IMG/VR virus record: IMGVR_UViG_3300025536_000010
Coordinates: 124,001 to 188,000 of that record
DNA length: 64,000 nt
Reading direction: 5' to 3' (one strand)
This document shows, piece after piece, positions 18,513-64,000 of the stretch. A model generated the notes under the pieces. That model had not been told where the DNA came from and did not search any database. It worked only from the letters and a program-made list of their open reading frames with translations. Positions within the stretch are counted from its first letter, which is position 1. Each line of letters begins with the position of its first letter. The translations under genes and the position numbers were made by a program.

Positions 18513-21500
18513 ATGGCAGACCACCCGGCGTTCGACCCCACCAAATGCGACGTGGAGCCGGTCGAGCGGATTCCCTGCGAAGACCTGCTCGTCGATCCGC
18601 GCGTGCCGGACCCGCCGAAAGAGATCCCGGACTGCCCAGCGACCGAGATCGAGAAGCTGCCGCCGGACCCGCCCTGCCCGGAGTTGAACGTCAAACGGCA
18701 CCCGGATTTCCCGTCGCCGCAAGTGCCGGCGTACATGGACCACGACATCTGCGAAACGCCCAAGTTAAACTTCAAAATCGAGAAGGTCGGCTGCTGCGAC
18801 TTTGATTTTGTCATCGACCTGTGCATCCCTTGCCCGGACCTGGAACCGCTCTACCCGTTCATTAAGGGCGTGCCTTTCACGTTCAGCGAGTCGACGCTGA
18901 CCTACGGCTTCATCCGCAAGCCAAACTGCGACTTCGAGTTCAGGATCGACCTGGAGATCCACTGTCCGTTTATCGGCCCGCTCGGGTTCGCCGTGAACAA
19001 GGGGGTACGTTACGGCCCGGCGCTGCTGACGTACAGCTTCTCCAAAACGGGAGCTTGCGATTATTTCCTGAACATCGACGTCTCCGTGCCTTGCCCGGCC
19101 GTTGGACCTATTTTTCCTGGCGAAGTGACGCCCATTCCTTTCAACGGCGTCAGCACGCTCGGCTTCCTCGTCTACTGGTTCAATCGCGGCGTAAACTGCA
19201 ACTACGATCTGGACATTTTTGCGGCAGCGCCGTGCCCGCCTATTGGCCCAAACGAGCCGCTGACCAAGCTGATCCCGTACAGCAAGCAGCAGACGATCCG
19301 CTACTACATGAGGCGTGCGCAAAACCCGGACGGCTCGCCGAAGTGCGAGTACGAACTCATCATCGACGCCCGCATCAAGTGCCCGCGCATCGAGCCGATC
19401 AACCTCAAGACGGTGCCGCTGACCCAGGTAAACACTGCGCCCAAGCTGCGCTACATCTTCCTGAAAAACGAGACGACCTGCGAATACGAACTGGTTATCC
19501 AGGGCGAATACCACTGCCCGAAGATGCTGCCAGACATCGCGGCGCCGCAGGTGCGGCCGATCCCGTTCGGAGCGGTGCAGCAGATCGTCTACTTCTTCCG
19601 CAAGCAAGGCATCTGCGACTACTTCCTGGACATCAACGCCAACATTATCTGCCCGCCGATGAAGCCAGAGGTCTGGAAGAACGTCAACCTCCAGCTGGTG
19701 CAGGTGCCGCCCAAGCTGCGCTTCCGCTTCGTCAAGATCCCGCCCTGCGGCTGGGAGTTGGAGATCGAAGGCGAGTGGCACTGCCCGATCATCAAACCTA
19801 TCGAGGCGGCCAAGGGCGAGCGCGGCGTCAAATTCGGCGACCCGGGGCAGATCCGCTGGTGGTTCGTCAAGATACTGCCCTGCGAGTTCGAGTTGAAAAT
19901 CGAACTCGACGTGCCGTGCCCGATCCTCAAACCCATCGTCGAACAAGAAGTCGACCTGGTCAAAGTGTTTGAGGCGCCCAAGCTATTTTTCAAGTTTGTC
20001 AAAGACCCCGCCGCCGATAAGTGCGAGTTCACCCTGGACATCTCCGGGGAATGGTTCTGCCCCATCGTGGACCCGCCGGAAGACGCCCCCGGAGTCGCGC
20101 CGCTAGGCGGCGGCGCGGGCGGCGAAATACGCTGGTGGTTCAGACGGGAAGCGCCTTGCCACTACGAGCTAATCATCGAAGGCGAGTGCCCCTGCGTAGT
20201 CATGCAGCCGGTCGACTTGACCAGCATACCGATCACCTTCACGAACAACGACGAAGGCTGGTTCGACTTCTATTTCGAGAAAGACCCGGACGACTGCATC
20301 TGGACGCTCGTCGTAGAAGAGATCCGCGTGCCGTGCCCCAAGATCGGGCCGACCGTGCTCGTCACCAAAGACGTTCACCCGGAGGACGTGCCCGGAGCCT
20401 TGGGCACGCTGGAGTATGTGTTTGTCAAAGCCGGAGCCGGCTGCCAGTACGACCTGGAAATCGACCTCATCACTCCTTGCCAGGAACACCTGCCCGATTG
20501 CGCGGCACCCGACGTCAAGCCAGTCCTCTGTTCGGGAACGTGCGAAGGCGAGTTGACCTACTGCTTCACGAAATACAACGAGTGCGATTACGATCTCAGC
20601 ATCGACGTCACCGTGCCGATCTGTCCGCCGGTCTGTACCTTCGACATCGAGATAAACTGCCACGACGAACCGTTTACGCCGACCGGCACCTGCGATGTTA
20701 CCGTCGTCAACGGTTGCGAACTCCAGTTCGACATGGTCTTGGACCTGGTCTGCGGCGGCGACGGCGATCAAGGCGCACAGGGGCATCAAGGCGCGCAAGG
20801 TGGAGCCGGCGGTGCCCAAGGACCACAAGGCCACCAGGGCGATCCTGGCGCTCAAGGCGATCCTGGCGACCCCGGACCACAAGGCGATCAGGGGCACCAA
20901 GGCGACCAGGGCGAAAAGGGCTGCGGCACCTGGCAAGGCCAGTGGCTGGCGGCTACCGCCTACGCAGCGTGCGACATCGTCTTCAACGACGGTGAGACGT
21001 TCCTCTGCACCGACGACCACACCTCGGCAAGTGGTGATGAGCCCGACATAGGAGCAACCTGGGCGACCAAATGGGACCGCATGGCCACCGGCATCAACTG
21101 GCGCGGTCCCTGGACAACGGCGACTGTCTACGGCGAGCACGACGCTGTCGAGAACAACGGCTCGTCCTACATCGCCAAGCTGACGCACACTTCCAGTGCG
21201 GGCACGGAACCTGGCGTGGGCGGCGGCTGGAACGTCGCCTGGGATCTGATGGCGGCCAAGGGAGCACAAGGCGCACAAGGCTCCCAAGGTGACCAAGGCA
21301 ACCAAGGTGTCCAGGGCAGGCAAGGCAACCAAGGCTTCCAAGGAAATCAGGGCACCCAAGGCTTCCAAGGGAATCAGGGCCTCCAGGGCCTCCAGGGCTC
21401 GACCGGCTCCAAACTGGCCATCGTGCCCTACTGGGACGAGTACGTTGCCCTGGCCTGCGTCGAAGCCCCCGAAGTACGCTTCGAGGACATCTTGCGAGTG

Positions 21501-21809
21501 CAGTTCAGCGGCGACCACCGCGACACGGTCATCGTTGACATTGACCCGGTATTTCTCGGCGTCTGCGAACCTGGTAGCATCGTTCCCGTCTCGGCTGTAC
21601 CCGCAACGCCGATCCCGGTTGGCGTGCAGGTCTGCGGCGGGCTAGTTTACGTCCGCGTCACGCGGAGCAGCGCAACGCCGCGCTTTCAAGGCGAAGTGAT
21701 TGTAAAACTGTCGGGCATCCGGCGGGATCACACCTGGCGCTTCCGGCGGCATACCGAAGACGACATGGTCGCCAACAACGCCTTCTGGCAAGGCTGGAAA
21801 AAGGAGTAA
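18513..21809 (+). CDS. tail fibre: ~15 Cys repeats, collagen-like segments, two CBM5/12-like modules, C-terminal chaperone-like domain
   Basis: C-x11-CP repeats; GxQ triplets ~20764-20920 and ~21261-21410; WQGQWLAATAY..D.V and WRGPWTTATVY..DAV; LACVEAPEVRFED. Confidence 0.8.
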   Translation: MADHPAFDPTKCDVEPVERIPCEDLLVDPRVPDPPKEIPDCPATEIEKLPPDPPCPELNVKRHPDFPSPQVPAYMDHDICETPKLNFKIEKVGCCDFDFVIDLCIPCPDLEPLYPFIKGVPFTFSESTLTYGFIRKPNCDFEFRIDLEIHCPFIGPLGFAVNKGVRYGPALLTYSFSKTGACDYFLNIDVSVPCPAVGPIFPGEVTPIPFNGVSTLGFLVYWFNRGVNCNYDLDIFAAAPCPPIGPNEPLTKLIPYSKQQTIRYYMRRAQNPDGSPKCEYELIIDARIKCPRIEPINLKTVPLTQVNTAPKLRYIFLKNETTCEYELVIQGEYHCPKMLPDIAAPQVRPIPFGAVQQIVYFFRKQGICDYFLDINANIICPPMKPEVWKNVNLQLVQVPPKLRFRFVKIPPCGWELEIEGEWHCPIIKPIEAAKGERGVKFGDPGQIRWWFVKILPCEFELKIELDVPCPILKPIVEQEVDLVKVFEAPKLFFKFVKDPAADKCEFTLDISGEWFCPIVDPPEDAPGVAPLGGGAGGEIRWWFRREAPCHYELIIEGECPCVVMQPVDLTSIPITFTNNDEGWFDFYFEKDPDDCIWTLVVEEIRVPCPKIGPTVLVTKDVHPEDVPGALGTLEYVFVKAGAGCQYDLEIDLITPCQEHLPDCAAPDVKPVLCSGTCEGELTYCFTKYNECDYDLSIDVTVPICPPVCTFDIEINCHDEPFTPTGTCDVTVVNGCELQFDMVLDLVCGGDGDQGAQGHQGAQGGAGGAQGPQGHQGDPGAQGDPGDPGPQGDQGHQGDQGEKGCGTWQGQWLAATAYAACDIVFNDGETFLCTDDHTSASGDEPDIGATWATKWDRMATGINWRGPWTTATVYGEHDAVENNGSSYIAKLTHTSSAGTEPGVGGGWNVAWDLMAAKGAQGAQGSQGDQGNQGVQGRQGNQGFQGNQGTQGFQGNQGLQGLQGSTGSKLAIVPYWDEYVALACVEAPEVRFEDILRVQFSGDHRDTVIVDIDPVFLGVCEPGSIVPVSAVPATPIPVGVQVCGGLVYVRVTRSSATPRFQGEVIVKLSGIRRDHTWRFRRHTEDDMVANNAFWQGWKKE

Positions 21810-21813
21810 TCGA

Positions 21814-23151
21814 ATGCTGGTCAGCGTTTTCACCCCGAGTCACAACCCCGAGTGGCTGGCCGACTGTTGGGCCTGCTTGCTGGAGCAAACGTACAAGGAA
21901 TGGGAGTGGATCATCGTCGCCAACGGCGACAACACCGACACAGTCGTCCTGTCTGTAGAGTTACTCTGCGGCGACGATCCGCGTGTCCGTGTCATCCGCT
22001 CCACCGAGACGAAGATCGGCGCGCTCAAACGGCTCGCCTGTGAGCAGGCGCTAGGCGACCTTTTCCTGGAGTACGACCACGACGACCTGCTCACCCACGA
22101 CTGTCTCGAAGCCGTGGTCGAGGCCGCCCGTGGGGCGCCCAAGGCCGCCTTTATCTGGTCCGACGACGTTAGCTGCGATTTCAGCGGGCAGAGCAAGCGC
22201 TACTCGGCTGACTGGGGCTGGCGGCAGACCCAGTGGACCTACAAGGGCAAGGAATACTGGATCAACGAGCATCACCCGATCACGGCTCGGTCCATGTGTG
22301 AGATTCTCTACACCCCGGACCACGTCCGCGTCTGGACCAGAGAAGCCTACCGACTGGTCGGCGGGCACAACAAGGAGATGCCCTACGGCGACGATCACGA
22401 ACTCATGGTGCGCACCTACCTCAAGGGCGTACCGTTCATTCATATCGCCAGGCCGTTGTACTTCCACCGGCAAGACGGCAAGAGCACCTGCCAGGTCAAA
22501 GTCAACGAGATCCAGCAGATCTCGCGGCAGAACCGCGACAAGTACCTGTACGACCTGGTCAAGGAATGGTGCCGCCGCGAAAAGCTGCCGATGTACGACC
22601 TGGGCGGCGCCCACGGTTGCCCGCTCGGCTACATCCCCATCGACATCAACCCCGCAGTCAAGCAGCACCCAGGCGGCATCTGCTGCGATGTCCTGCCCAA
22701 CGTCGACAACGAGGACGTCCGCGGCCTGAGCGGCCTTTACGCGCACCTCAAGCCAAACTCGGTCGGCTGCTTCCGGGCCTTCGACTTCCTGGAGCACATC
22801 CCCGGGCCGCAGATCCCGAAGCTGATGAACATGCTCTACGATCTGCTGGTGCCCGGCGGCTGGCTGCTGACTATGACGCCGGCCGTCTGCGACGACAACG
22901 GCCGGGCCGGACGCGGGGCCTATCAAGACCCCACGCACGTTTCGTTTTGGTCCAGCAACAACTTCTGGTACTACACCAAGAAGGACCAGGCCAAGTACGT
23001 CCCGGAGATCACCTGCCGCTTCCAGGCGGCGCGGCTGGCAAACCTCTACCCCAGCAAGTTTCACCACACGCATCTGATCCCCTACGTCCTCGCGGACTTG
23101 ATGGCTTTGAAAGACGGCAATGCGTACGCGCCGGGGCCGAAGGAGATCTAG
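21814..23151 (+). CDS. GT2 glycosyltransferase fused to a SAM-methyltransferase-like domain
   Basis: VSVFTPSHN...LLEQTYKEWEWII, YDHDDLL, GDDHEL; then YDLGGAH, AFDFLEHI, LVPGGWL, QDPTHVSFW. Confidence 0.85.
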   Translation: MLVSVFTPSHNPEWLADCWACLLEQTYKEWEWIIVANGDNTDTVVLSVELLCGDDPRVRVIRSTETKIGALKRLACEQALGDLFLEYDHDDLLTHDCLEAVVEAARGAPKAAFIWSDDVSCDFSGQSKRYSADWGWRQTQWTYKGKEYWINEHHPITARSMCEILYTPDHVRVWTREAYRLVGGHNKEMPYGDDHELMVRTYLKGVPFIHIARPLYFHRQDGKSTCQVKVNEIQQISRQNRDKYLYDLVKEWCRREKLPMYDLGGAHGCPLGYIPIDINPAVKQHPGGICCDVLPNVDNEDVRGLSGLYAHLKPNSVGCFRAFDFLEHIPGPQIPKLMNMLYDLLVPGGWLLTMTPAVCDDNGRAGRGAYQDPTHVSFWSSNNFWYYTKKDQAKYVPEITCRFQAARLANLYPSKFHHTHLIPYVLADLMALKDGNAYAPGPKEI

Positions 23152-25259
23152 TGCATACGTTCATCTTCAACAACAAATGGGCGCTCGGTGACACGGTCTG
23201 CCTCTCAGCCCTGGTGCGCGACCTACACCGAGCGTACCCCGGACAGTACCGCGTGCTGCTGGCCCAGCACTACCAGTCCTACTGGAAATACCTGAGCATC
23301 GCCAAGGCCCTGCCCGACAACGAGCAAGCCGCGGTGAAAGGCCAGGTGGTCCAGTTAGAGTACCTGTCAGGCATCAGGGCGGCCGGCAATGGCTCCAAAA
23401 GCCATTTTTTGGCTTACTGGCACCGGGCGTTCGAGAACGCCACCGGCCTGCGGGTGCCCTGCACCGAACCCAAAGGCGTCATCGGCTTGGCACCGGAGGC
23501 GCAGACGTCGCCCTACCCGTTCCGCTATTGGGTCGTCGTGGCCGGCGGCAAGCACGACGCCACAGTCAAAGTCTGGTACACGCATCGCTACCAGCAAGCC
23601 GTAGACACGCTCCAGGGCCTGGGCCTCAAGTTCGTCCAGGCCGGGGCTGACTTCAACAAACACTTTCACCCGCGGCTCCAGCGCGTGGAACAGTCCATCG
23701 GCAAGACCGACGACATTCAGGATTTCTTCCGCCTGATCTATCACGCCGAAGGCGTCCTCTGCGGCGTCACCGGAGCCATGCACATCGCCGCGGTCTTCGA
23801 CAAGCCCTGCGTCGTCGTGGCCGGTGGCCGGGAGGAGCCCTGGTGGGAGGCGTACACCAATTGTTACTTCCCCGAGTCTTTTGGCCCAGCCTGCGCGCCG
23901 GTGAAAGTCGAGCACACTTTTCTGCACACCCTGGGCCTGCTCGATTGTGGCTGCGGCAACCTCAACAAGGGCTGCTGGCGGGACCGGACAGTGCCCATCG
24001 AGCGCACGGACCACTCCAACGCCGCCCAGATCCACAAGCTATGCAAGCGGCCGATCCGCGACGCTCCCCAGGCCGTGCCCGAGTGCATGCACCTGATCGA
24101 AGTTGACCACGTCGTCGAGGCTGTCATGAACTACTACGAGAAAGGCATCTTGCCGCCCATCGGCAAGCCCACCCGCAAGTACGCCGAAGCGATAACGCTC
24201 GACTACCCAATGCAGCCGTTAGTCGGCACGCCGAAAGCGCCTAACCCGATCAAGGAACTCTGGGACAAGTCAGTCGCATCGGCGACGCCGATAGATCTGG
24301 CCCAGGAAAGAGAGAGACACAAGATCCGCGGCATCGGCACGAACATCACCCCACTGCTGCGCGACCTGCCGCCGCTGCCCAGGGAAGCCACGCACCTCAT
24401 GGTCAACCCGCCGACGCTGCGCGAGTTGGAAAAATGGGGCAGAGAGATGCCAAGGGAGGTTCAATCGCGGGTCGGGGAAGACCCTGACCTGGCAGTTCTC
24501 GACCACCCCTACATCGGCGGCAAGTTCACCGTGTTCGTCCTGGGATACGGGGAGCACCTGGCGCTGGTGAAACGCTGCCTCGGGTCGATCCTGGACAACG
24601 CTCCCTCAGCCAGGATCGACCTGCGCGTCGCCCTCAACCAACCGAGCAAGCCCATGCTCGACTACATCACCGGCTTCGACAAGAAGACTGTGACACGGGT
24701 CTATCTCGACCACGGCGACCGGCGGAAATACCCGGCCATGCGAGAGATGTTCTGGGACGACAGCTGCCCTATCGAAACCAAATACGTCCTGTGGTTCGAC
24801 GACGACAGCCACGTCGTCGACAAGAAATGGCTGGTCGAACTCGGCCACGTCATCGTCGGCAACCACCCGCACGGCAGTCGCATGTTTGGCTGCAAGTACA
24901 TTCACGACCTGATGGGCTTCCGCCGGCGCGGCTTTGCCCCTGAGAAGTGGTTCCAGGCAGCCCGCTGGTGGCAAAGTAAGCCGCTGCACCTGGCCAAAGG
25001 CGCGCGTACCGGCCCCAACGGCAGCGAGATCGTCTTCGCTTCTGGCGGCTTCTGGGCCTTGGCCACAGAAGTCATCCGCAAAGCAGACATCCCGGACGCG
25101 CGCTTGAACCACAACGGCGGCGACATCACCATCGGCGCCCAGGTCCACCAGGCCGGGTTCAAGGTTTGCGATTTCGCCCGCGGCAAGAAGCCGGTGTGCT
25201 GGTCGGACGCCCAGCGCCGCGGCTATCACGAGGCGTTCCCCTGGAGTGAGGTAACGTGA
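23151..25259 (+). CDS. GT9 (heptosyltransferase-like) plus GT2-like glycosyltransferase fusion
   Basis: GTG 23151 after AGGAG; ALGDTVCLSALVRDLHRAYPG, LIYHAEGVLCGVTGAMHIAAVFDKPCVV; C-terminal YVLWFDDDSH and GGD. Confidence 0.8.
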   Translation: MHTFIFNNKWALGDTVCLSALVRDLHRAYPGQYRVLLAQHYQSYWKYLSIAKALPDNEQAAVKGQVVQLEYLSGIRAAGNGSKSHFLAYWHRAFENATGLRVPCTEPKGVIGLAPEAQTSPYPFRYWVVVAGGKHDATVKVWYTHRYQQAVDTLQGLGLKFVQAGADFNKHFHPRLQRVEQSIGKTDDIQDFFRLIYHAEGVLCGVTGAMHIAAVFDKPCVVVAGGREEPWWEAYTNCYFPESFGPACAPVKVEHTFLHTLGLLDCGCGNLNKGCWRDRTVPIERTDHSNAAQIHKLCKRPIRDAPQAVPECMHLIEVDHVVEAVMNYYEKGILPPIGKPTRKYAEAITLDYPMQPLVGTPKAPNPIKELWDKSVASATPIDLAQERERHKIRGIGTNITPLLRDLPPLPREATHLMVNPPTLRELEKWGREMPREVQSRVGEDPDLAVLDHPYIGGKFTVFVLGYGEHLALVKRCLGSILDNAPSARIDLRVALNQPSKPMLDYITGFDKKTVTRVYLDHGDRRKYPAMREMFWDDSCPIETKYVLWFDDDSHVVDKKWLVELGHVIVGNHPHGSRMFGCKYIHDLMGFRRRGFAPEKWFQAARWWQSKPLHLAKGARTGPNGSEIVFASGGFWALATEVIRKADIPDARLNHNGGDITIGAQVHQAGFKVCDFARGKKPVCWSDAQRRGYHEAFPWSEVT

Positions 25260-30865: not shown

Positions 30866-31072
30866 ATGATCCTGAACTTCTACCACCGCAACGGCAAGAA
30901 GGAACGACGCCCGCTCGGTTACGGCGGCGGCCTCTGCCACGAAGCCACCAAGCCGTACGAACGGCGGGAGATTCCCGGTCAGATGAGAAACACGCCCACG
31001 CCCGAGGCGTATCAGGAACCGGCCGACACCACAGGTGAATCGGTCGTCGAACGGCAGCAACTGCGAGGTTGA
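30866..31072 (+). CDS. DUF2997-like small protein
   Basis: GYGGGLCHEATKPYE...TPEAY; SD GAGGAG; lies between DUF1257-like and AAA genes. Confidence 0.55.
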   Translation: MILNFYHRNGKKERRPLGYGGGLCHEATKPYERREIPGQMRNTPTPEAYQEPADTTGESVVERQQLRG

Positions 31073-33044
31073 TATGGCTCTGGCGAGCCTGCGTAAAGAG
31101 TTCGGCGTAGCGGTCGGCGCCGCCGAGCAAGCCATCCGCGTGAACACCGACGAGTTGGACGACGCCATCTCCACCATCGGCGAAGTCTGCAAACAGCACG
31201 GCTGGGAACTGCGTGTCTGGGACCACGTCTCTGGCACGATCTGGCATAACGGCGAGCCGCCCAAGAAAGACGTTCCCGGCGGGGCTTTGACCAAGAAACA
31301 AGCGCTCATGGCAGACCTCAACTCACCCGAGGGGCCGACTACGCCGCTCCAGGAGTTGCTGGGCTTTTTAGCCGAGACACCTCGGCCCGACACCGAGGAC
31401 AAGGGCGAGGTGGTGCCCGTCGTCTTGGTGATGAAGAACTTCCATCTGCTGTTCGAGCGCGATCGCGGCCCGGCGGTCGCGGCCGTACAGCACCTGGTCG
31501 CGGACAAAGTCGGCGACCACGCCCTTTACAACAAACAGGACTCGAACAAGCAGCCGAGCTATATGCGGCAGCTGATGGACCAGTTCGGAATCGAGCCCGA
31601 GTCGGACACGGGCAAGTTCATCGTGGGCCTGATGCCGGCCCAGGCACAGCTGCCGCCCGAGGTCAGCCCCCTCTTCAAGGTCATCGAGCACGAACTGCCA
31701 GACGAGGAGGAGTTGGGGGTCATTCTGGACGGCATCGTACCTTCCGGCGAGGCCGCGCAGGACGAGGACGGGCCGGCAATCTCGAAGTCTGTACGCAAGC
31801 GGGTCTGCAAGCACGCTCGCGGGCTGACGCGCTTGCAAGCCGAAGGCGTCTTCTCCGCGTGCATGGTCCAGAACGGCAAGAAACAGAACTTCGAGGAGAT
31901 CTTGCCCAAGTACGTCTGGGAGCACAAAAGCCGCATCCTCAACCGCGAGGGGTTGGTGACCCTGTACGGCGGCAAGGAAACCTTCGACGATGTCGTCGGC
32001 TTGCACGGGGCCAAGGAGATCTTCAAAGACCTGCTGGCACCCGACAAGTACGACCCGGACAACCCCGATCTCCGGTCCAAGGGCGCCGCCTTGGTCGGCC
32101 CGCCGCGTACCGGCAAGTCGTTGATCGCCAAGGCGTGCAACGGCACGCTCGATCTACCCGTCCTGATGTGCGACCCCGGCTCGCTCATGGGCGGTTTCGT
32201 CGGCGACACCGAACGCAACACGCGGAAGTTCTTCCAGATCGTACGGGCACACGCCCCCTGCATCGCTGTGATCGACGAGGTCGAAAAGGTGATGCCGAGC
32301 GCGCGGGGCGGGGAACACGACAGCGGGGTCGGAAAGAGAATGGCAGGCCAGTTCATGACGCAGATGCAGGACATCCAGGAGCCCGTCTTCTGGGTGTTCA
32401 CGGCGAACGGCGTCGAGGACTTGCACGAGGCGTTTCTGGCGGATGACCGCGTGGACACTGTCATCTACGTTCACATGCCCGGCCCCGCGCAGCGGGCAGC
32501 CGGTTGGAAGATGTACATCCAGAAGTTCTTCCCGGCGGAAGTCCGGGGGAAAGCGTTCCCGCACCACCTGACCACGGAGTTCGACGAGGTGCTGGGCGAA
32601 TTCAAGAAGACCAAGAAGGTCAACGCGCTGGAGTGGGCCAACAAGTTCATTGCGGCGCTGCTTTGCCTGCACGGGGCGGAGCGGGAGGCCGCGCTGGCCC
32701 GCCTCGCCAAGCAAGACGACAACGTGTTCACGACCGTCAGCAACCAACTGGTTGACGACGCCGACTGGACGCTGGCGCGCATCAAAGCGGTTTGCCGCCT
32801 GGCCAGGAAGCGTAACCGGAGCCTGGCCCAGATCGCCAAGATGATGCCGCGCTACTCAGCAAAGCTGGAGAAGTCCATCCGCCGGCTCGAAAACTGGGCC
32901 GAGGACGAAGCCGTCGACAGCGAGACGGGCGAAGCCTACGTTCGCCCCGAAGATCAGCCGGACGCGCCGGCGGGTTCCGGCGGCAAGGTGAAGACGACAC
33001 GCAGCGGCAAGGTGAAGCGCAAAGTGCGCCGCGTCGCCGACTGA
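31035..33044 (+). CDS. Ycf46-like AAA+ ATPase
   Basis: Degenerate N-terminal domain (LVMKNFH); FDDVVGL; Walker A GPPRTGKS; Walker B IAVIDEVEK; FTAN sensor 1. Confidence 0.85.
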   Translation: MNRSSNGSNCEVDMALASLRKEFGVAVGAAEQAIRVNTDELDDAISTIGEVCKQHGWELRVWDHVSGTIWHNGEPPKKDVPGGALTKKQALMADLNSPEGPTTPLQELLGFLAETPRPDTEDKGEVVPVVLVMKNFHLLFERDRGPAVAAVQHLVADKVGDHALYNKQDSNKQPSYMRQLMDQFGIEPESDTGKFIVGLMPAQAQLPPEVSPLFKVIEHELPDEEELGVILDGIVPSGEAAQDEDGPAISKSVRKRVCKHARGLTRLQAEGVFSACMVQNGKKQNFEEILPKYVWEHKSRILNREGLVTLYGGKETFDDVVGLHGAKEIFKDLLAPDKYDPDNPDLRSKGAALVGPPRTGKSLIAKACNGTLDLPVLMCDPGSLMGGFVGDTERNTRKFFQIVRAHAPCIAVIDEVEKVMPSARGGEHDSGVGKRMAGQFMTQMQDIQEPVFWVFTANGVEDLHEAFLADDRVDTVIYVHMPGPAQRAAGWKMYIQKFFPAEVRGKAFPHHLTTEFDEVLGEFKKTKKVNALEWANKFIAALLCLHGAEREAALARLAKQDDNVFTTVSNQLVDDADWTLARIKAVCRLARKRNRSLAQIAKMMPRYSAKLEKSIRRLENWAEDEAVDSETGEAYVRPEDQPDAPAGSGGKVKTTRSGKVKRKVRRVAD

Positions 33045-41623: not shown

Positions 41624-41854
41624 GTGGCGCTGCCTACCATCAACATCATCATCGAAGGGCCGGCGTGCGAAGAACGCCTGGCACTCTGCTACTTGCTGCA
41701 CCGGGAACTGCTCCACTCGCAGTTTCCGACGCAGTGCAACGAAACGTCTGTGCCGCACAACTACATCCAGAAGCTCGTCAGCTACCGTGAGGCCCTCAAA
41801 GCCGACGGTGTGACGCTGTCGATCACAACCAGAGAGGGTAATGCCGGTGGATGA
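41624..41854 (+). CDS. small hypothetical protein
   Basis: GGAGG SD; fills the gap between neighbours. Confidence 0.5.
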   Translation: MALPTINIIIEGPACEERLALCYLLHRELLHSQFPTQCNETSVPHNYIQKLVSYREALKADGVTLSITTREGNAGG

Positions 41855-42743
41855 GTACCAACTGTTTCATAAGCAGCGGATCATGTTCGCCATCGTGCCC
41901 GGTGAAAAGCTGGTCATTCTTTCTGATCCCGGCTTCATGACGCACGAGCAGTGGTTCAAAGCCCGAGGCTGGGAGCGCTACCTCGACAGTGCCACCCGCG
42001 GCTACTGGCACGCGCCCACCAACGTCGTCGCGTTCTACAGCGGCCCCTACTTCGACGCGGACGCGCGGGACGAGAAAGCATTCCTGGCCAACCTGCGCGA
42101 CCTGGTTTACCATCTCAGCATTCCCGGCGACGCCAGGGTCTGGGCCGGCGTGCAGCCGCAGGACAAGCCAGGCGGGCAGTGGCCGCCGCGAAAAGAGTTG
42201 GGGACAGTGGCCAAGTTCTTGCCGGCCGCAAAGAAGTCCTACGCCAAAAAGACAATGGGCTGCGGCGTGTTCGTCGTCAGGTACGAGGCCAACGCCGGCC
42301 ACGCCATCCTGCTGGGCCGCCGCGGCCCTGAGTGCAAGTGGGGCAGCGGCCTCTGGGCGCTCCCCGGCGGCATGATCGACGAAGGCGACACGCTCGAACA
42401 GACGGCCCTCAAGGAGGTCGAACAGGAGACGGGCCTGGTCGTGTCCCTGCCCGTCGCCTGGCCGCCGTTCTGCGTGCGTGGGTTGCTGGCCGTCACAGAC
42501 CACACGGCCGAGGAGATGCACCCCGAGATGAAGATGGAGCACATGTCCTCCTGGATCTTGGCGCACTACCGCGGCGGCGAGCCGCAGATCAAGGAGCCGA
42601 CGAAGTGTCTGGAGTGGCGCTGGTGGCACCTGCGCCAACTCCGGCTGATCGAAGGCTGCCACGACCGAGCGCACCCCCAGTATTACTGGTTGCCGTTCGA
42701 CCTTTGGCAGCACCTGCTACGGCCGCATTGTGGAGAGTTTTGA
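41841..42743 (+). CDS. Nudix hydrolase with uncharacterised N-terminal domain
   Basis: Nudix box WALPGGMIDEGDTLEQTALKEVEQETGL; KEPTKCLEWRWW. Confidence 0.85.
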   Translation: MPVDEYQLFHKQRIMFAIVPGEKLVILSDPGFMTHEQWFKARGWERYLDSATRGYWHAPTNVVAFYSGPYFDADARDEKAFLANLRDLVYHLSIPGDARVWAGVQPQDKPGGQWPPRKELGTVAKFLPAAKKSYAKKTMGCGVFVVRYEANAGHAILLGRRGPECKWGSGLWALPGGMIDEGDTLEQTALKEVEQETGLVVSLPVAWPPFCVRGLLAVTDHTAEEMHPEMKMEHMSSWILAHYRGGEPQIKEPTKCLEWRWWHLRQLRLIEGCHDRAHPQYYWLPFDLWQHLLRPHCGEF

Positions 42744-63477: not shown

Positions 63478-63669
63478 ATGTTACCTGAACCATCCAAGCC
63501 TGGAGTCCAGCTGTGCATGAAGTGCGGCTGGAAGTTCATCAGTCCTGACCCGGAGCGTATCCGTCGCTGTCAGGACTGCAAGAAACACGAAGAACTGTAC
63601 GAACCGCCCTCGGGGAGGCTAGTCCTCACCGAGGGCATCGTACACATCCTCTGGGAGTTCCAGCAGTGA
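63478..63669 (+). CDS. small Zn-ribbon protein
   Basis: GGAGG SD; CMKC..F.S...RRCQDC. Confidence 0.65.
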   Translation: MLPEPSKPGVQLCMKCGWKFISPDPERIRRCQDCKKHEELYEPPSGRLVLTEGIVHILWEFQQ

Positions 63670-64000
63670 GCGTCGTACGCAAGATCATCGTCCTGGGTGA
63701 CGTTATTCTCGACCGTACGGTTTTCTGCCGTATCAAGGGCCTCTCGCCTGAAAACCAAAATATCTTCGACGTCGAAGAGAAGCACGGCGACAACGCCCTG
63801 GGTGGGGCTGGCAACGTCGCTGCCAACTGCTTCGGGCTGTTCGGGCAGAAAGACGGTCAGTCGGTGCTACCGCTGTTCCTGGTCGCGGCCGACGATGCTG
63901 GCAGGGAGATTACCTGCCTGTTGAACTGTCTGCATGTGGAGTACGGCCTGGACCGTTACTACGGCGGCGTGACAGCGGAGAAGATTCGCTACGTCACCAG
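63666..64000 (+). CDS. HldE/RfaE-like sugar (heptose-7-phosphate) kinase, PfkB family, 5' part only
   Basis: My translation from GTG 63666 (GTGA overlap): IIVLGDVILDRTVFCRIKGLSPEN...LGGAGNVAANC...DDAGREI...TAEKIRY; open to window end; not in ORF track. Confidence 0.8.
   Translation, partial: MSVVRKIIVLGDVILDRTVFCRIKGLSPENQNIFDVEEKHGDNALGGAGNVAANCFGLFGQKDGQSVLPLFLVAADDAGREITCLLNCLHVEYGLDRYYGGVTAEKIRYVT

What the first reader, a model, noticed from the sequence alone, without database searches (positions are those of the whole stretch)
63666..64000. Unannotated HldE/RfaE-type heptose kinase gene at the window edge
The ORF track misses it because it has no stop codon in the window. GDVILDR, SPE, LGGAGNVAAN and T.EK.R match the kinase domain of HldE. 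It is translationally coupled to a phage-like Zn-ribbon gene, so it appears to be phage-borne. An LPS-core sugar enzyme is an unusual auxiliary gene, and it could supply the GT9 donor.
Basis: partly seen in the sequence, partly recalled or inferred. Interest (0 to 1): 0.6.

Follow-up and report, generated by a model that had tools for sequence, protein, structure and literature searches.

The report
Jumbo-phage split ADP-heptose synthesis genes
The open frame at the window edge is the start of an intact heptose-kinase gene, followed by a separate heptose adenylyltransferase gene, in an uncultured 235-kb phage; this is a divergent example of a kind of viral sugar-nucleotide gene that is already known.

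Summary
Observation confirmed. Window 63666-64000 is the first 111 codons of an intact 351-aa gene. Its GTG start overlaps the TGA stop of the upstream Zn-ribbon ORF, and the gene ends 721 nt past the window. The GAGD motif is present. The best profile is rfaE_dom_I, the best solved structure and best fold match are Burkholderia HldA, and in a tree it sits with heptose kinases, far from ribokinase.

The next gene overlaps its stop and encodes a separate 179-aa HldC-type adenylyltransferase, 41% identical to E. coli HldE domain II. Both score below NCBIfam equivalog cut-offs, so the substrate is inferred.

The record is a complete 234,886-bp, 62% GC phage from a subsurface metagenome, and phage replication genes follow. 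The kinase, the transferase and a 72-aa ORF form a cassette between the Zn-ribbon and mre11-like genes. It is present in five related contigs and absent at the same junction in two others. No gmhA, gmhB or hldD was found, which is the usual viral pattern.

The GT9 lead holds up: a 702-aa GT9+GT-A fusion sits beside a GT2+methyltransferase gene, after the tail-fibre gene. Relatives without the cassette also carry it, so donor supply is plausible but unproven.

HldE-like genes are common in viral contigs. This is a new member of a known kind.

The parts
63666..64000 (+). 5' 335 nt (111 codons) of a 351-aa HldA-like (PfkB-fold) heptose-7-phosphate kinase gene. The gene continues to genome 188721, i.e. 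721 nt past the window (L001:1767-2822).
   Evidence: Pfam PfkB 1.2e-13. TIGR02198 rfaE_dom_I 3.9e-42 against ribokinase 3.9e-11. PDB HldA 4e84 is best by sequence and by fold: E 3.6e-24, TM 0.75-0.86. Hallmark residues conserved.
63478..63669 (+). 63-aa Zn-ribbon-like ORF (CxxC...CxxC) whose TGA overlaps the kinase GTG. It is a conserved core gene of this phage group and marks the upstream edge of the cassette.
   Evidence: weak PF07295. Homologues of 43-67% identity occur in all seven related loci, both with and without the cassette.
23151..25259 (+). 702-aa two-domain glycosyltransferase (P0121): an N-terminal GT9 (GT-B) heptosyltransferase-like domain (res 1-338) with a Cys-rich insertion, then a C-terminal GT-A domain (res ~444-702, DDD motif). 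Candidate consumer of the nucleotide-heptose.
   Evidence: PF01075 at 21-24 bits, borderline. AF2 pLDDT 84.5. Foldseek and VIA top hits are GT9 3tov, WaaF 1psw, TibC 4rb4 and WaaC, Z 19-23. The GD and KxW motifs align with WaaC/WaaF. Homologues of 40-63% identity occur on more than 200 mostly large contigs.
21814..23151 (+). 445-aa GT2 + methyltransferase gene. Its end overlaps the start of the GT9 fusion gene, and it is highly conserved.
   Evidence: PF00535 1.1e-16 and PF13489 2.3e-6. 70% and 51% identity in relatives G001 and G003 in the same gene order.
18513..21809 (+). 1098-aa tail-fibre-like protein with collagen triple-helix repeats and CBM5/12 modules, directly upstream of the glycosyltransferase pair.
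   Evidence: Pfam Collagen 1.4e-11 and CBM_5_12 1.9e-7. PHROG tail-fibre families, e.g. phrog_5073 3.4e-30.

Best explanation
The edge ORF begins an intact gene for a divergent HldA-type kinase. [quoted passage not shown] The overlapping next gene encodes a separate HldC-type nucleotidyltransferase that, by inference, converts heptose 1-phosphate plus ATP into ADP-heptose. With a 72-aa ORF they form a three-gene accessory cassette, lodged between a Zn-ribbon gene and the mre11/rad50-like genes of an uncultured 235-kb contractile-tail phage. The phage has no isomerase (GmhA), phosphatase (GmhB) or epimerase (HldD). It must therefore take heptose 7-phosphate from the host, and the 7-phosphate must be removed by a host or unidentified phosphatase. 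The two phage genes cover the steps that fix the anomer and the nucleotide. The most likely use of the product is as donor for the phage's own conserved glycosylation module beside the tail-fibre gene (GT2+methyltransferase, GT9+GT-A). The acceptor is unknown; I guess a virion protein. Shown here: gene structure, homology, fold, conserved residues, cassette distribution, and absence of the other pathway genes. Inferred: substrate, product and acceptor.
For: The gene is intact, with overlapping starts and stops. Kinase: rfaE_dom_I 144.5 bits against 42.8 for ribokinase. All named relatives are heptose kinases. HldA 4e84 is the top hit by sequence and by fold. In a tree the kinase lies in a 17-member phage clade (SH-aLRT 100) beside bacterial HldE/HldA, with E. 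coli RbsK and PfkB far outside. D12, D16, S27, E29, GG46-47, N50, K106, R108, R118, Y160, K162 and GAGD are conserved. Transferase: rfaE_dom_II 106.5 bits against about 40 for the next family. HldC 5x9q is the top PDB hit. It is 41% identical to E. coli HldE domain II, with the NGxFDxxHxGH, RLKGxxRP, FxEDTP and KG motifs and a GCHTT end motif. The pair keeps the same position in five related contigs and is missing at that junction in G001 and G003. Kinase plus transferase without GmhA/GmhB is the common viral pattern (PMC11461863). The GT9 fold and motifs of P0121 are confirmed.
Against: Both proteins score far below the NCBIfam equivalog cut-offs (144.5 vs 345; 106.5 vs 181.5), so substrate specificity is not established. 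The Mg-binding NXXE motif reads NVKQ in all 17 clade members; 9 of 103 bacterial relatives share this. The HENase motif (F/L)XXGXSTT reads MEIGCHTT and varies in relatives. The clade has a roughly 25-aa insertion that is absent from bacterial kinases. The GT9 fusion protein occurs in relatives without the cassette, including one 98% complete, so it does not need a phage-made donor. The cassette lies in the replication module, 40 kb from the glycosyltransferase genes. No activity, host or acceptor is known.
Confidence: 0.65

Rival explanations
1. The enzymes are the same, but the purpose is host-directed. The cassette keeps up or raises ADP-heptose supply for the host's LPS inner core, either to keep the envelope intact during a long jumbo-phage infection or to alter the receptor against superinfection. 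This is the usual reading of rfaE/hldE as an auxiliary metabolic gene.
For: rfaE/hldE and waaF are listed as viral LPS AMGs (PMC10653327). At least 299 IMG/VR contigs carry HldE-like kinases, mostly without a nearby GT9 gene (1 of 80 loci had a WaaF-like hit). The cassette is accessory and unlinked to the phage glycosyltransferase genes.
Against: This phage group encodes its own conserved GT9-fold enzyme, which would be a direct consumer. The host is unknown, so it is not known whether it has heptose in its LPS. The kinase clade is old and specific to this phage lineage (31-43% identity, one clade), not a recent capture from a host.
Confidence: 0.2
2. The pair activates a different sugar phosphate, not D-glycero-D-manno-heptose, to make another nucleotide sugar for the phage glycosyltransferases.
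For: Scores are well below equivalog cut-offs. The NxxQ variant, the clade-specific insertion and the variable C-terminal STT motif all depart from the bacterial enzymes. The second-best PDB hits of the transferase are ethanolamine- and choline-phosphate cytidylyltransferases.
Against: Both partners independently hit the two HldE domains best, by wide margins. Residues conserved across HldE-like kinases are all kept. A GT9-fold enzyme is present in the same genome.
Confidence: 0.1
3. The nucleotide-heptose feeds DNA hypermodification (heptosylated bases). A phage gene cluster of kinase, cytidylyltransferase and a GT-B DNA glycosyltransferase has been shown to do this.
For: The precedent is mono- and di-heptosyl-5hmC made by a phage cluster (bioRxiv 10.1101/2023.12.21.572611). 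The cassette sits among replication and recombination genes.
Against: No thymidylate-synthase-like hydroxymethylase was found in G000, G001 or G003. No Tet/JBP hit was found either, but that search had no positive control. The glycosyltransferase genes lie in the structural module next to the tail fibre. The precedent used different kinase and GT families.
Confidence: 0.04
4. The ORF is not a working phage gene. It is a pseudogene, host contamination or a misassembled contig end.
For: The gene runs off the window, and the record is a metagenome assembly classed as linear.
Against: The frame is intact at 351 aa with GC3 0.81, like its neighbours. 47 kb of further phage sequence follow. Synteny with five independent contigs from other samples is conserved. 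CheckV completeness is 100%.
Confidence: 0.01

Closest known systems
HldA / HldC, the split form of HldE (RfaE), e.g. Burkholderia cenocepacia HldA (PDB 4e84) and B. pseudomallei HldC (PDB 5x9q)
   Same: Two separate adjacent genes: a PfkB-fold kinase with GAGD, and a cytidylyltransferase-fold transferase with HxGH. Both are the top PDB matches. The residues conserved in HldE-like kinases are kept.
   Different: Only 25-30% identical for the kinase. NxxQ in place of NxxE. A roughly 25-aa clade-specific insertion (res ~215-258). HTT in place of STT in the transferase end motif. Below the NCBIfam equivalog cut-offs. Encoded by a phage, with no gmhA, gmhB or hldD in the genome.
Viral NDP-heptose biosynthetic enzymes (Tang et al., Science 2024, as summarised in PMC11573728 and PMC11461863); PHROG phrog_7878; HldE-like genes in IMG/VR contigs
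   Same: A virus-encoded kinase plus heptose nucleotidyltransferase with no phosphatase. The same gene content is seen in most of 80 IMG/VR loci. The transferase matches phrog_7878.
   Different: This clade is distinct: 24-30% identity to the IMG/VR kinases, with no homologue in cultured phages. Position 5 of the HENase motif is Cys, as in E. coli HldE, not the Arg linked to CTP/UTP promiscuity. No HldD-like gene is present, whereas 48 of 80 IMG/VR loci have one.
GT9 heptosyltransferases WaaC/WaaF (LPS) and TibC (protein O-heptosyltransferase)
   Same: The N-terminal domain of P0121 has the GT9 fold (Z 19-23). The GD catalytic motif, KxW and MHxAA align with WaaC/WaaF.
   Different: It is fused to a GT-A domain. 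It carries a Cys-rich insertion of about 75 residues that WaaC/WaaF lack. The Pfam score is borderline. It is phage-encoded next to a tail-fibre gene, and the acceptor is unknown.
Phage DNA-heptosylation gene cluster (bioRxiv 10.1101/2023.12.21.572611, contig 53)
   Same: A phage-encoded kinase, a cytidylyltransferase-fold enzyme and a GT-B enzyme that together use heptose.
   Different: That cluster uses an APH/HAD-type kinase-phosphatase and a T4 beta-GT-like DNA glycosyltransferase, alongside 5hmC-forming enzymes. No 5hmC machinery was detected here, and the GT is GT9-like and sits in the structural module.

Membership tests
PfkB / ribokinase superfamily (PF00294) | Profile match above the Pfam gathering score, and a ribokinase-like fold | tested here: met
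   51.6 bits against a cut-off of 25.8. The AF2 model (pLDDT 89.5) matches PfkB kinases at TM 0.64-0.86.
PfkB / ribokinase superfamily (PF00294) | GXGD anion hole with the catalytic Asp | tested here: met
   DVTGAGDT at res 296-303. G299, A300, G301 and D302 are invariant in 17 phage and 102 of 103 bacterial relatives.
PfkB / ribokinase superfamily (PF00294) | NXXE Mg-binding motif (PMC5931981) | tested here: inconclusive
   It reads N206-V-K-Q209. Q is found in 17 of 17 clade members, and also in 9 of 103 bacterial HldE-like kinases.
HldA / HldE domain I (TIGR02198, heptose-7-phosphate kinase) | Best-scoring family, and a score above the NCBIfam equivalog cut-off | tested here: not met
   It is the best family by about 100 bits (144.5 against 42.8 for ribokinase), but it is below the cut-off of 345. 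I therefore file it as HldA-like, not as an equivalog.
HldA / HldE domain I (TIGR02198, heptose-7-phosphate kinase) | Family-conserved residues (GDxxLD, SPE, GGAxNVA, K..R, DYxKG) | tested here: met
   All are invariant or nearly so in the phage clade and in 103 bacterial relatives.
HldA / HldE domain I (TIGR02198, heptose-7-phosphate kinase) | Groups with heptose kinases and not with other PfkB kinases | tested here: met
   In the tree the phage clade lies beside bacterial HldE/HldA, with E. coli RbsK and PfkB on branches longer than 6 (only two outgroups). HldA is the top structural hit, E 3.6e-24 against 1e-17 for ribokinases.
HldA / HldE domain I (TIGR02198, heptose-7-phosphate kinase) | [quoted passage not shown] | not testable with these tools
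   This needs an enzyme assay or complementation of an E. coli hldE mutant.
HldC / HldE domain II (TIGR02199, heptose-1-phosphate adenylyltransferase) | Cytidylyltransferase fold with the HxGH motif | tested here: met
   PF01467 at 39.1 bits against a cut-off of 21. NGCFDLLHIGH aligns with E. coli NGVFDILHAGH.
HldC / HldE domain II (TIGR02199, heptose-1-phosphate adenylyltransferase) | Score above the NCBIfam equivalog cut-off | tested here: not met
   106.5 bits against a cut-off of 181.5. It is still the best family by about 65 bits, and it is 41% identical to E. coli domain II.
HldC / HldE domain II (TIGR02199, heptose-1-phosphate adenylyltransferase) | HENase end motif (F/L)XXGXSTT (PMC11461863) | tested here: inconclusive
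   It reads MEIGCHTT. G and TT are kept, S is replaced by H, and F/L by M. Relatives show STT, RTT, HTS, HSS and TSQ. Position 5 is Cys, as in E. coli HldE, not Arg.
[quoted passage not shown] | Isomerase, phosphatase and epimerase genes are present | tested here: not met
   No hit for PF13580 or TIGR01656. phmmer with E. coli GmhA, GmhB and HldD against all ORFs of 50 aa or more found nothing at E <= 10.
GT9 heptosyltransferases (PF01075), for P0121 | GT-B fold of the GT9 type, with the GD catalytic Asp and the KxW motif | tested here: met
   VIA Z 23.1 (3tov), 21.4 (WaaF), 20.9 (TibC) and 19.5 (WaaC) over res 1-338. G13, D14, K140, W142 and H211 align with WaaC/WaaF. The Pfam score is borderline: 21.2-23.6 against a cut-off of 22.
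GT9 heptosyltransferases (PF01075), for P0121 | Uses ADP-heptose as donor | not testable with these tools
   This needs a donor-specificity assay.

The most novel reading that the evidence does not exclude
This uncultured jumbo-phage group decorates its own virion, perhaps the collagen-like tail fibre encoded next door, with a methylated heptose-containing glycan. The glycan would be built by the GT2+methyltransferase and GT9+GT-A enzymes. The HldA/HldC cassette would let some members make the ADP-beta-heptose donor in hosts that supply heptose 7-phosphate but not ADP-heptose, for example hosts with only the GDP-alpha-heptose route. That would be the first heptosylated phage particle and a phage counterpart of TibC-type protein heptosylation.
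Probability: 0.15. Interest if true: 0.7.

Novelty: new member of a known kind. Interest (0 to 1): 0.35.

Why it matters
It adds a well-defined, ancient, lineage-specific clade of split heptose kinase and adenylyltransferase genes to the known viral NDP-heptose enzymes. It places them in a jumbo phage that also carries a conserved GT9-containing glycosylation module, which gives a concrete system for asking what viruses do with nucleotide-heptoses. The commentaries on Tang et al. leave that question open. For annotation, it shows that the window-edge ORF is a real gene, and that the phage supplies only the two steps that fix the anomer and the nucleotide.

Tried and rejected
1. A fused adenylyltransferase was rejected: the transferase is a separate overlapping gene.
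2. Searches for gmhA, gmhB, hldD and waaC/waaF in the phage found nothing.
3. Searches for 5hmC machinery found no thymidylate-synthase-like or Tet/JBP gene (the Tet search had no positive control). DNA heptosylation is therefore unsupported.
4. No cultured-phage relatives were found: tblastn of the kinase, the GT9 fusion protein and the Rad50-like protein against 50,697 phage records gave no phage hit. The only hit was a Salmonella record filed there.
5. The 72-aa cassette ORF has no Pfam or PHROG family, and the Atlas leads were all under 0.9.
6. Promoter and terminator scans around the cassette were at chance level, with nothing on the + strand inside the cassette.
7. Whether cassette-bearing relatives also carry the GT9 fusion protein could not be tested, because their records are not held (error).
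8. Host inference failed: no tRNA genes, the nearest bacterial kinases come from many phyla, and the only sequencing run holding the DNA is a subsurface metagenome that is probably the source sample, with no RNA run.
9. The large representative search was not run, because word search and family scans settled the identity.

Full report
**The observation**

The window is G000:C1:124001-188000 of a 234,886-bp virus record that CheckV rates 100% complete. It is 62.4% GC. With open ends allowed, the ORF listing shows a frame from window 63666 (GTG) that runs off the window end after 111 codons.

The GTG (63666-63668) overlaps the TGA (63667-63669) of a 63-aa CxxC...CxxC ORF at 63478-63669. A GGGAG lies 8 nt upstream of the GTG. 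In the full record the frame continues without interruption to genome 188721, giving 351 aa with DVTGAGDT near the C-terminus.

**What the protein is**

- **Profiles.** Pfam gives PfkB at 1.2e-13. NCBIfam's best model is rfaE_dom_I (TIGR02198) at 3.9e-42 and 144.5 bits, then the HldE full-length model, with ribokinase far behind at 42.8 bits. The score is well below the equivalog cut-off of 345.
- **Relatives.** The word-based protein search found a small group of close relatives (P0002-P0017, 31-43% identity, several on contigs of 60-214 kb). After them come thousands of bacterial proteins at about 28-32% identity, and every named one is a heptose-7-phosphate kinase or HldE.
- **Solved structures.** The best solved relative by sequence is Burkholderia cenocepacia HldA, 4e84, at 1.5e-16. 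An AF2 model (pLDDT 89.5, pTM 0.91) matches HldA best (E 3.6e-24, TM 0.75-0.86, 25-26% identity), with ribokinases at about 1e-17 and 17-18% identity.
- **Tree.** A maximum-likelihood tree puts the 17 phage-type kinases in one clade (SH-aLRT 100) beside bacterial HldE/HldA. E. coli RbsK and PfkB sit on very long outgroup branches. Only two outgroups were used.
- **Conserved residues.** Over 120 sequences, D12, D16, S27, E29, G46, G47, N50, K106, R108, R118, Y160, K162, N206, D296 and GAGD are invariant or nearly so in both phage and bacterial sets.
- **Departures.** The Mg-binding NXXE motif of the ribokinase family (PMC5931981) reads NxxQ in all 17 clade members, but also in 9 of 103 bacterial relatives. 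The clade also carries a roughly 25-residue insertion after that motif.

**The neighbouring transferase**

The stop of the kinase (L001:2820-2822) overlaps GTG (2819) and ATG (2822) of a 179-aa ORF.

- Its best family is rfaE_dom_II (TIGR02199) at 1e-30 and 106.5 bits, against a cut-off of 181.5. The next unrelated family scores about 40 bits.
- Pfam gives CTP_transf_like, and PHROGs gives phrog_7878, annotated as bifunctional heptose kinase/adenylyltransferase.
- The top PDB hit is B. pseudomallei HldC, 5x9q.
- It is 41% identical to E. coli HldE domain II and shares NGxFDxxHxGH, RLKGxxRP, FxEDTP and KG.
- The heptose-nucleotidyltransferase motif (F/L)XXGXSTT (PMC11461863) reads MEIGCHTT. Position 5 is Cys, as in E. 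coli HldE (FEDGCSTT), not the Arg linked to CTP/UTP use. The motif varies among relatives.

The arrangement is therefore the split HldA/HldC form, not a fusion.

**Is it phage-borne?**

Yes.

- Downstream lie an Mre11/SbcD-like phosphoesterase, a Rad50/SbcC-like ATPase, a helicase, a DnaB-like protein and a primase-like protein.
- The window also holds a baseplate wedge gene and a collagen/CBM5-12 tail-fibre gene.
- Almost all genes are on one strand.
- No cultured phage has a detectable homologue of the kinase, the Rad50-like protein or the GT9 protein.
- The only sequencing run holding the DNA is a subsurface metagenome.

**The cassette and its distribution**

In five related contigs from other samples the order is the same: Zn-ribbon, kinase, transferase, small ORF, mre11-like, rad50-like. 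Identities to this phage are 31-38% for the kinase, 32-43% for the transferase and 39-62% for Mre11-like. One of the five (L004) lacks the small ORF.

In two IMG/VR relatives, one of them 98% complete, neither the kinase profile nor the transferase finds anything. In both, the Zn-ribbon gene abuts the mre11-like gene with a gap of about 100 nt.

The kinase, the transferase and the 72-aa ORF therefore form an accessory cassette at a fixed site. It has a single origin in this lineage and a patchy distribution.

**The rest of the pathway**

No SIS_2 (GmhA) or HAD-IIIA (GmhB) profile hit exists in the genome. phmmer with E. coli GmhA, GmhB, HldD, WaaC and WaaF against all ORFs of 50 aa or more finds nothing; HldE finds only these two genes.

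This is the usual viral pattern. Among the 80 best IMG/VR loci with an HldE-like kinase, 59 have the transferase part, 48 an HldD-like gene, 6 GmhB, 4 GmhA and 1 a WaaF-like gene. The commentary on Tang et al. also notes that the phosphatase is absent in viruses.

**The GT9 lead**

- **Pfam.** The weak PF01075 hit lies in a 702-aa gene at window 23151-25259 (P0121).
- **Fold.** Its AF2 model (pLDDT 84.5) has an N-terminal GT9 fold. VIA gives Z 23.1 to 3tov, 21.4 to WaaF, 20.9 to TibC and 19.5 to WaaC. The C-terminal domain is GT-A, with Z 15-17.
- **Motifs.** The GD catalytic motif, KxW and MHxAA align with WaaC/WaaF. A Cys-rich insertion of about 75 residues is specific to the phage proteins.
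- **Neighbour.** The gene directly upstream (window 21814-23151) is a GT2 + methyltransferase. It overlaps the start of the GT9 fusion gene and follows the tail-fibre gene. This order is kept in relatives at 51-70% identity.
- **Conservation.** The GT9 fusion protein is 40-63% identical across more than 200 mostly large contigs, and it is present in the relatives that lack the cassette.

The phage thus has a plausible consumer of ADP-heptose. That consumer does not depend on a phage-made donor, and the link is inferred.

**Mechanism**

Committed reading: the host's GmhA supplies heptose 7-phosphate. The phage kinase makes the 1,7-bisphosphate. A host or unidentified phosphatase removes the 7-phosphate. 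The phage transferase makes ADP-heptose, which most likely feeds the phage's own glycosylation module. I guess the acceptor is a virion protein, from the gene position.

Rivals:
- support or remodelling of host LPS;
- a different sugar substrate;
- DNA heptosylation. A precedent exists, but no hydroxymethylase or Tet-like gene was found.

**Novelty**

HldE-like genes are frequent in viral contigs (at least 299 in IMG/VR). They are listed among marine viral AMGs, have a PHROG family, and viral enzymes were reported as functional.

What is new here is a divergent, lineage-specific split pair in an uncultured jumbo phage that also encodes a conserved GT9+GT-A fusion. I rate it a new member of a known kind, of moderate interest.

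**Limits**

Nothing was assayed and the host is unknown. Co-occurrence of the cassette with the glycosyltransferase module in other cassette-bearing phages could not be checked. Read laying, complex prediction and the large representative search were not used.

Noticed in passing
window 21814-23151 (+): A 445-aa GT2 + methyltransferase gene that a longest-ORF pass misses, because a longer overlapping frame hides it. It is among the best-conserved genes of the group (70% identity in G001).
   Followed up: partly
window 23151-25259 (+), residues ~227-312 of P0121: A Cys-rich insertion in the GT9 domain (C266, C275, C298 and C312 are invariant in 25 homologues) that WaaC/WaaF lack. It recalls the metal-binding finger of the protein heptosyltransferase TibC. 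Metal binding was not tested.
   Followed up: partly
genome 189277-189495 (L001:3378-3596), just past the window: A 72-aa ORF that occurs in four of the five cassette-bearing relatives (not L004) and in neither cassette-free relative. It is better conserved (51-67%) than either enzyme. No family or fold lead was found.
   Followed up: partly
window 18513-21809 (+): A 1098-aa tail-fibre-like protein that combines collagen triple-helix repeats with two CBM5/12 (chitin-binding type) modules.
   Followed up: no
window 41841-42743 (+) and 31035-33044 (+): A 300-aa NUDIX hydrolase and a 669-aa AAA ATPase. The NUDIX enzyme could in principle act on nucleotide sugars.
   Followed up: no
L004:7824-9734 and L088:11293-12399: In related contigs, a weakly TnpB-like (Cas12f1-like_TNB) 636-aa gene lies just upstream of the Zn-ribbon gene, and an AcrVA2-like gene lies between the mre11-like and rad50-like genes.
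   Followed up: no
whole record G000: No tRNA genes in 235 kb. About 90% of high-GC3 ORFs are on the + strand. No detectable protein similarity to any cultured phage for three core proteins.
   Followed up: partly
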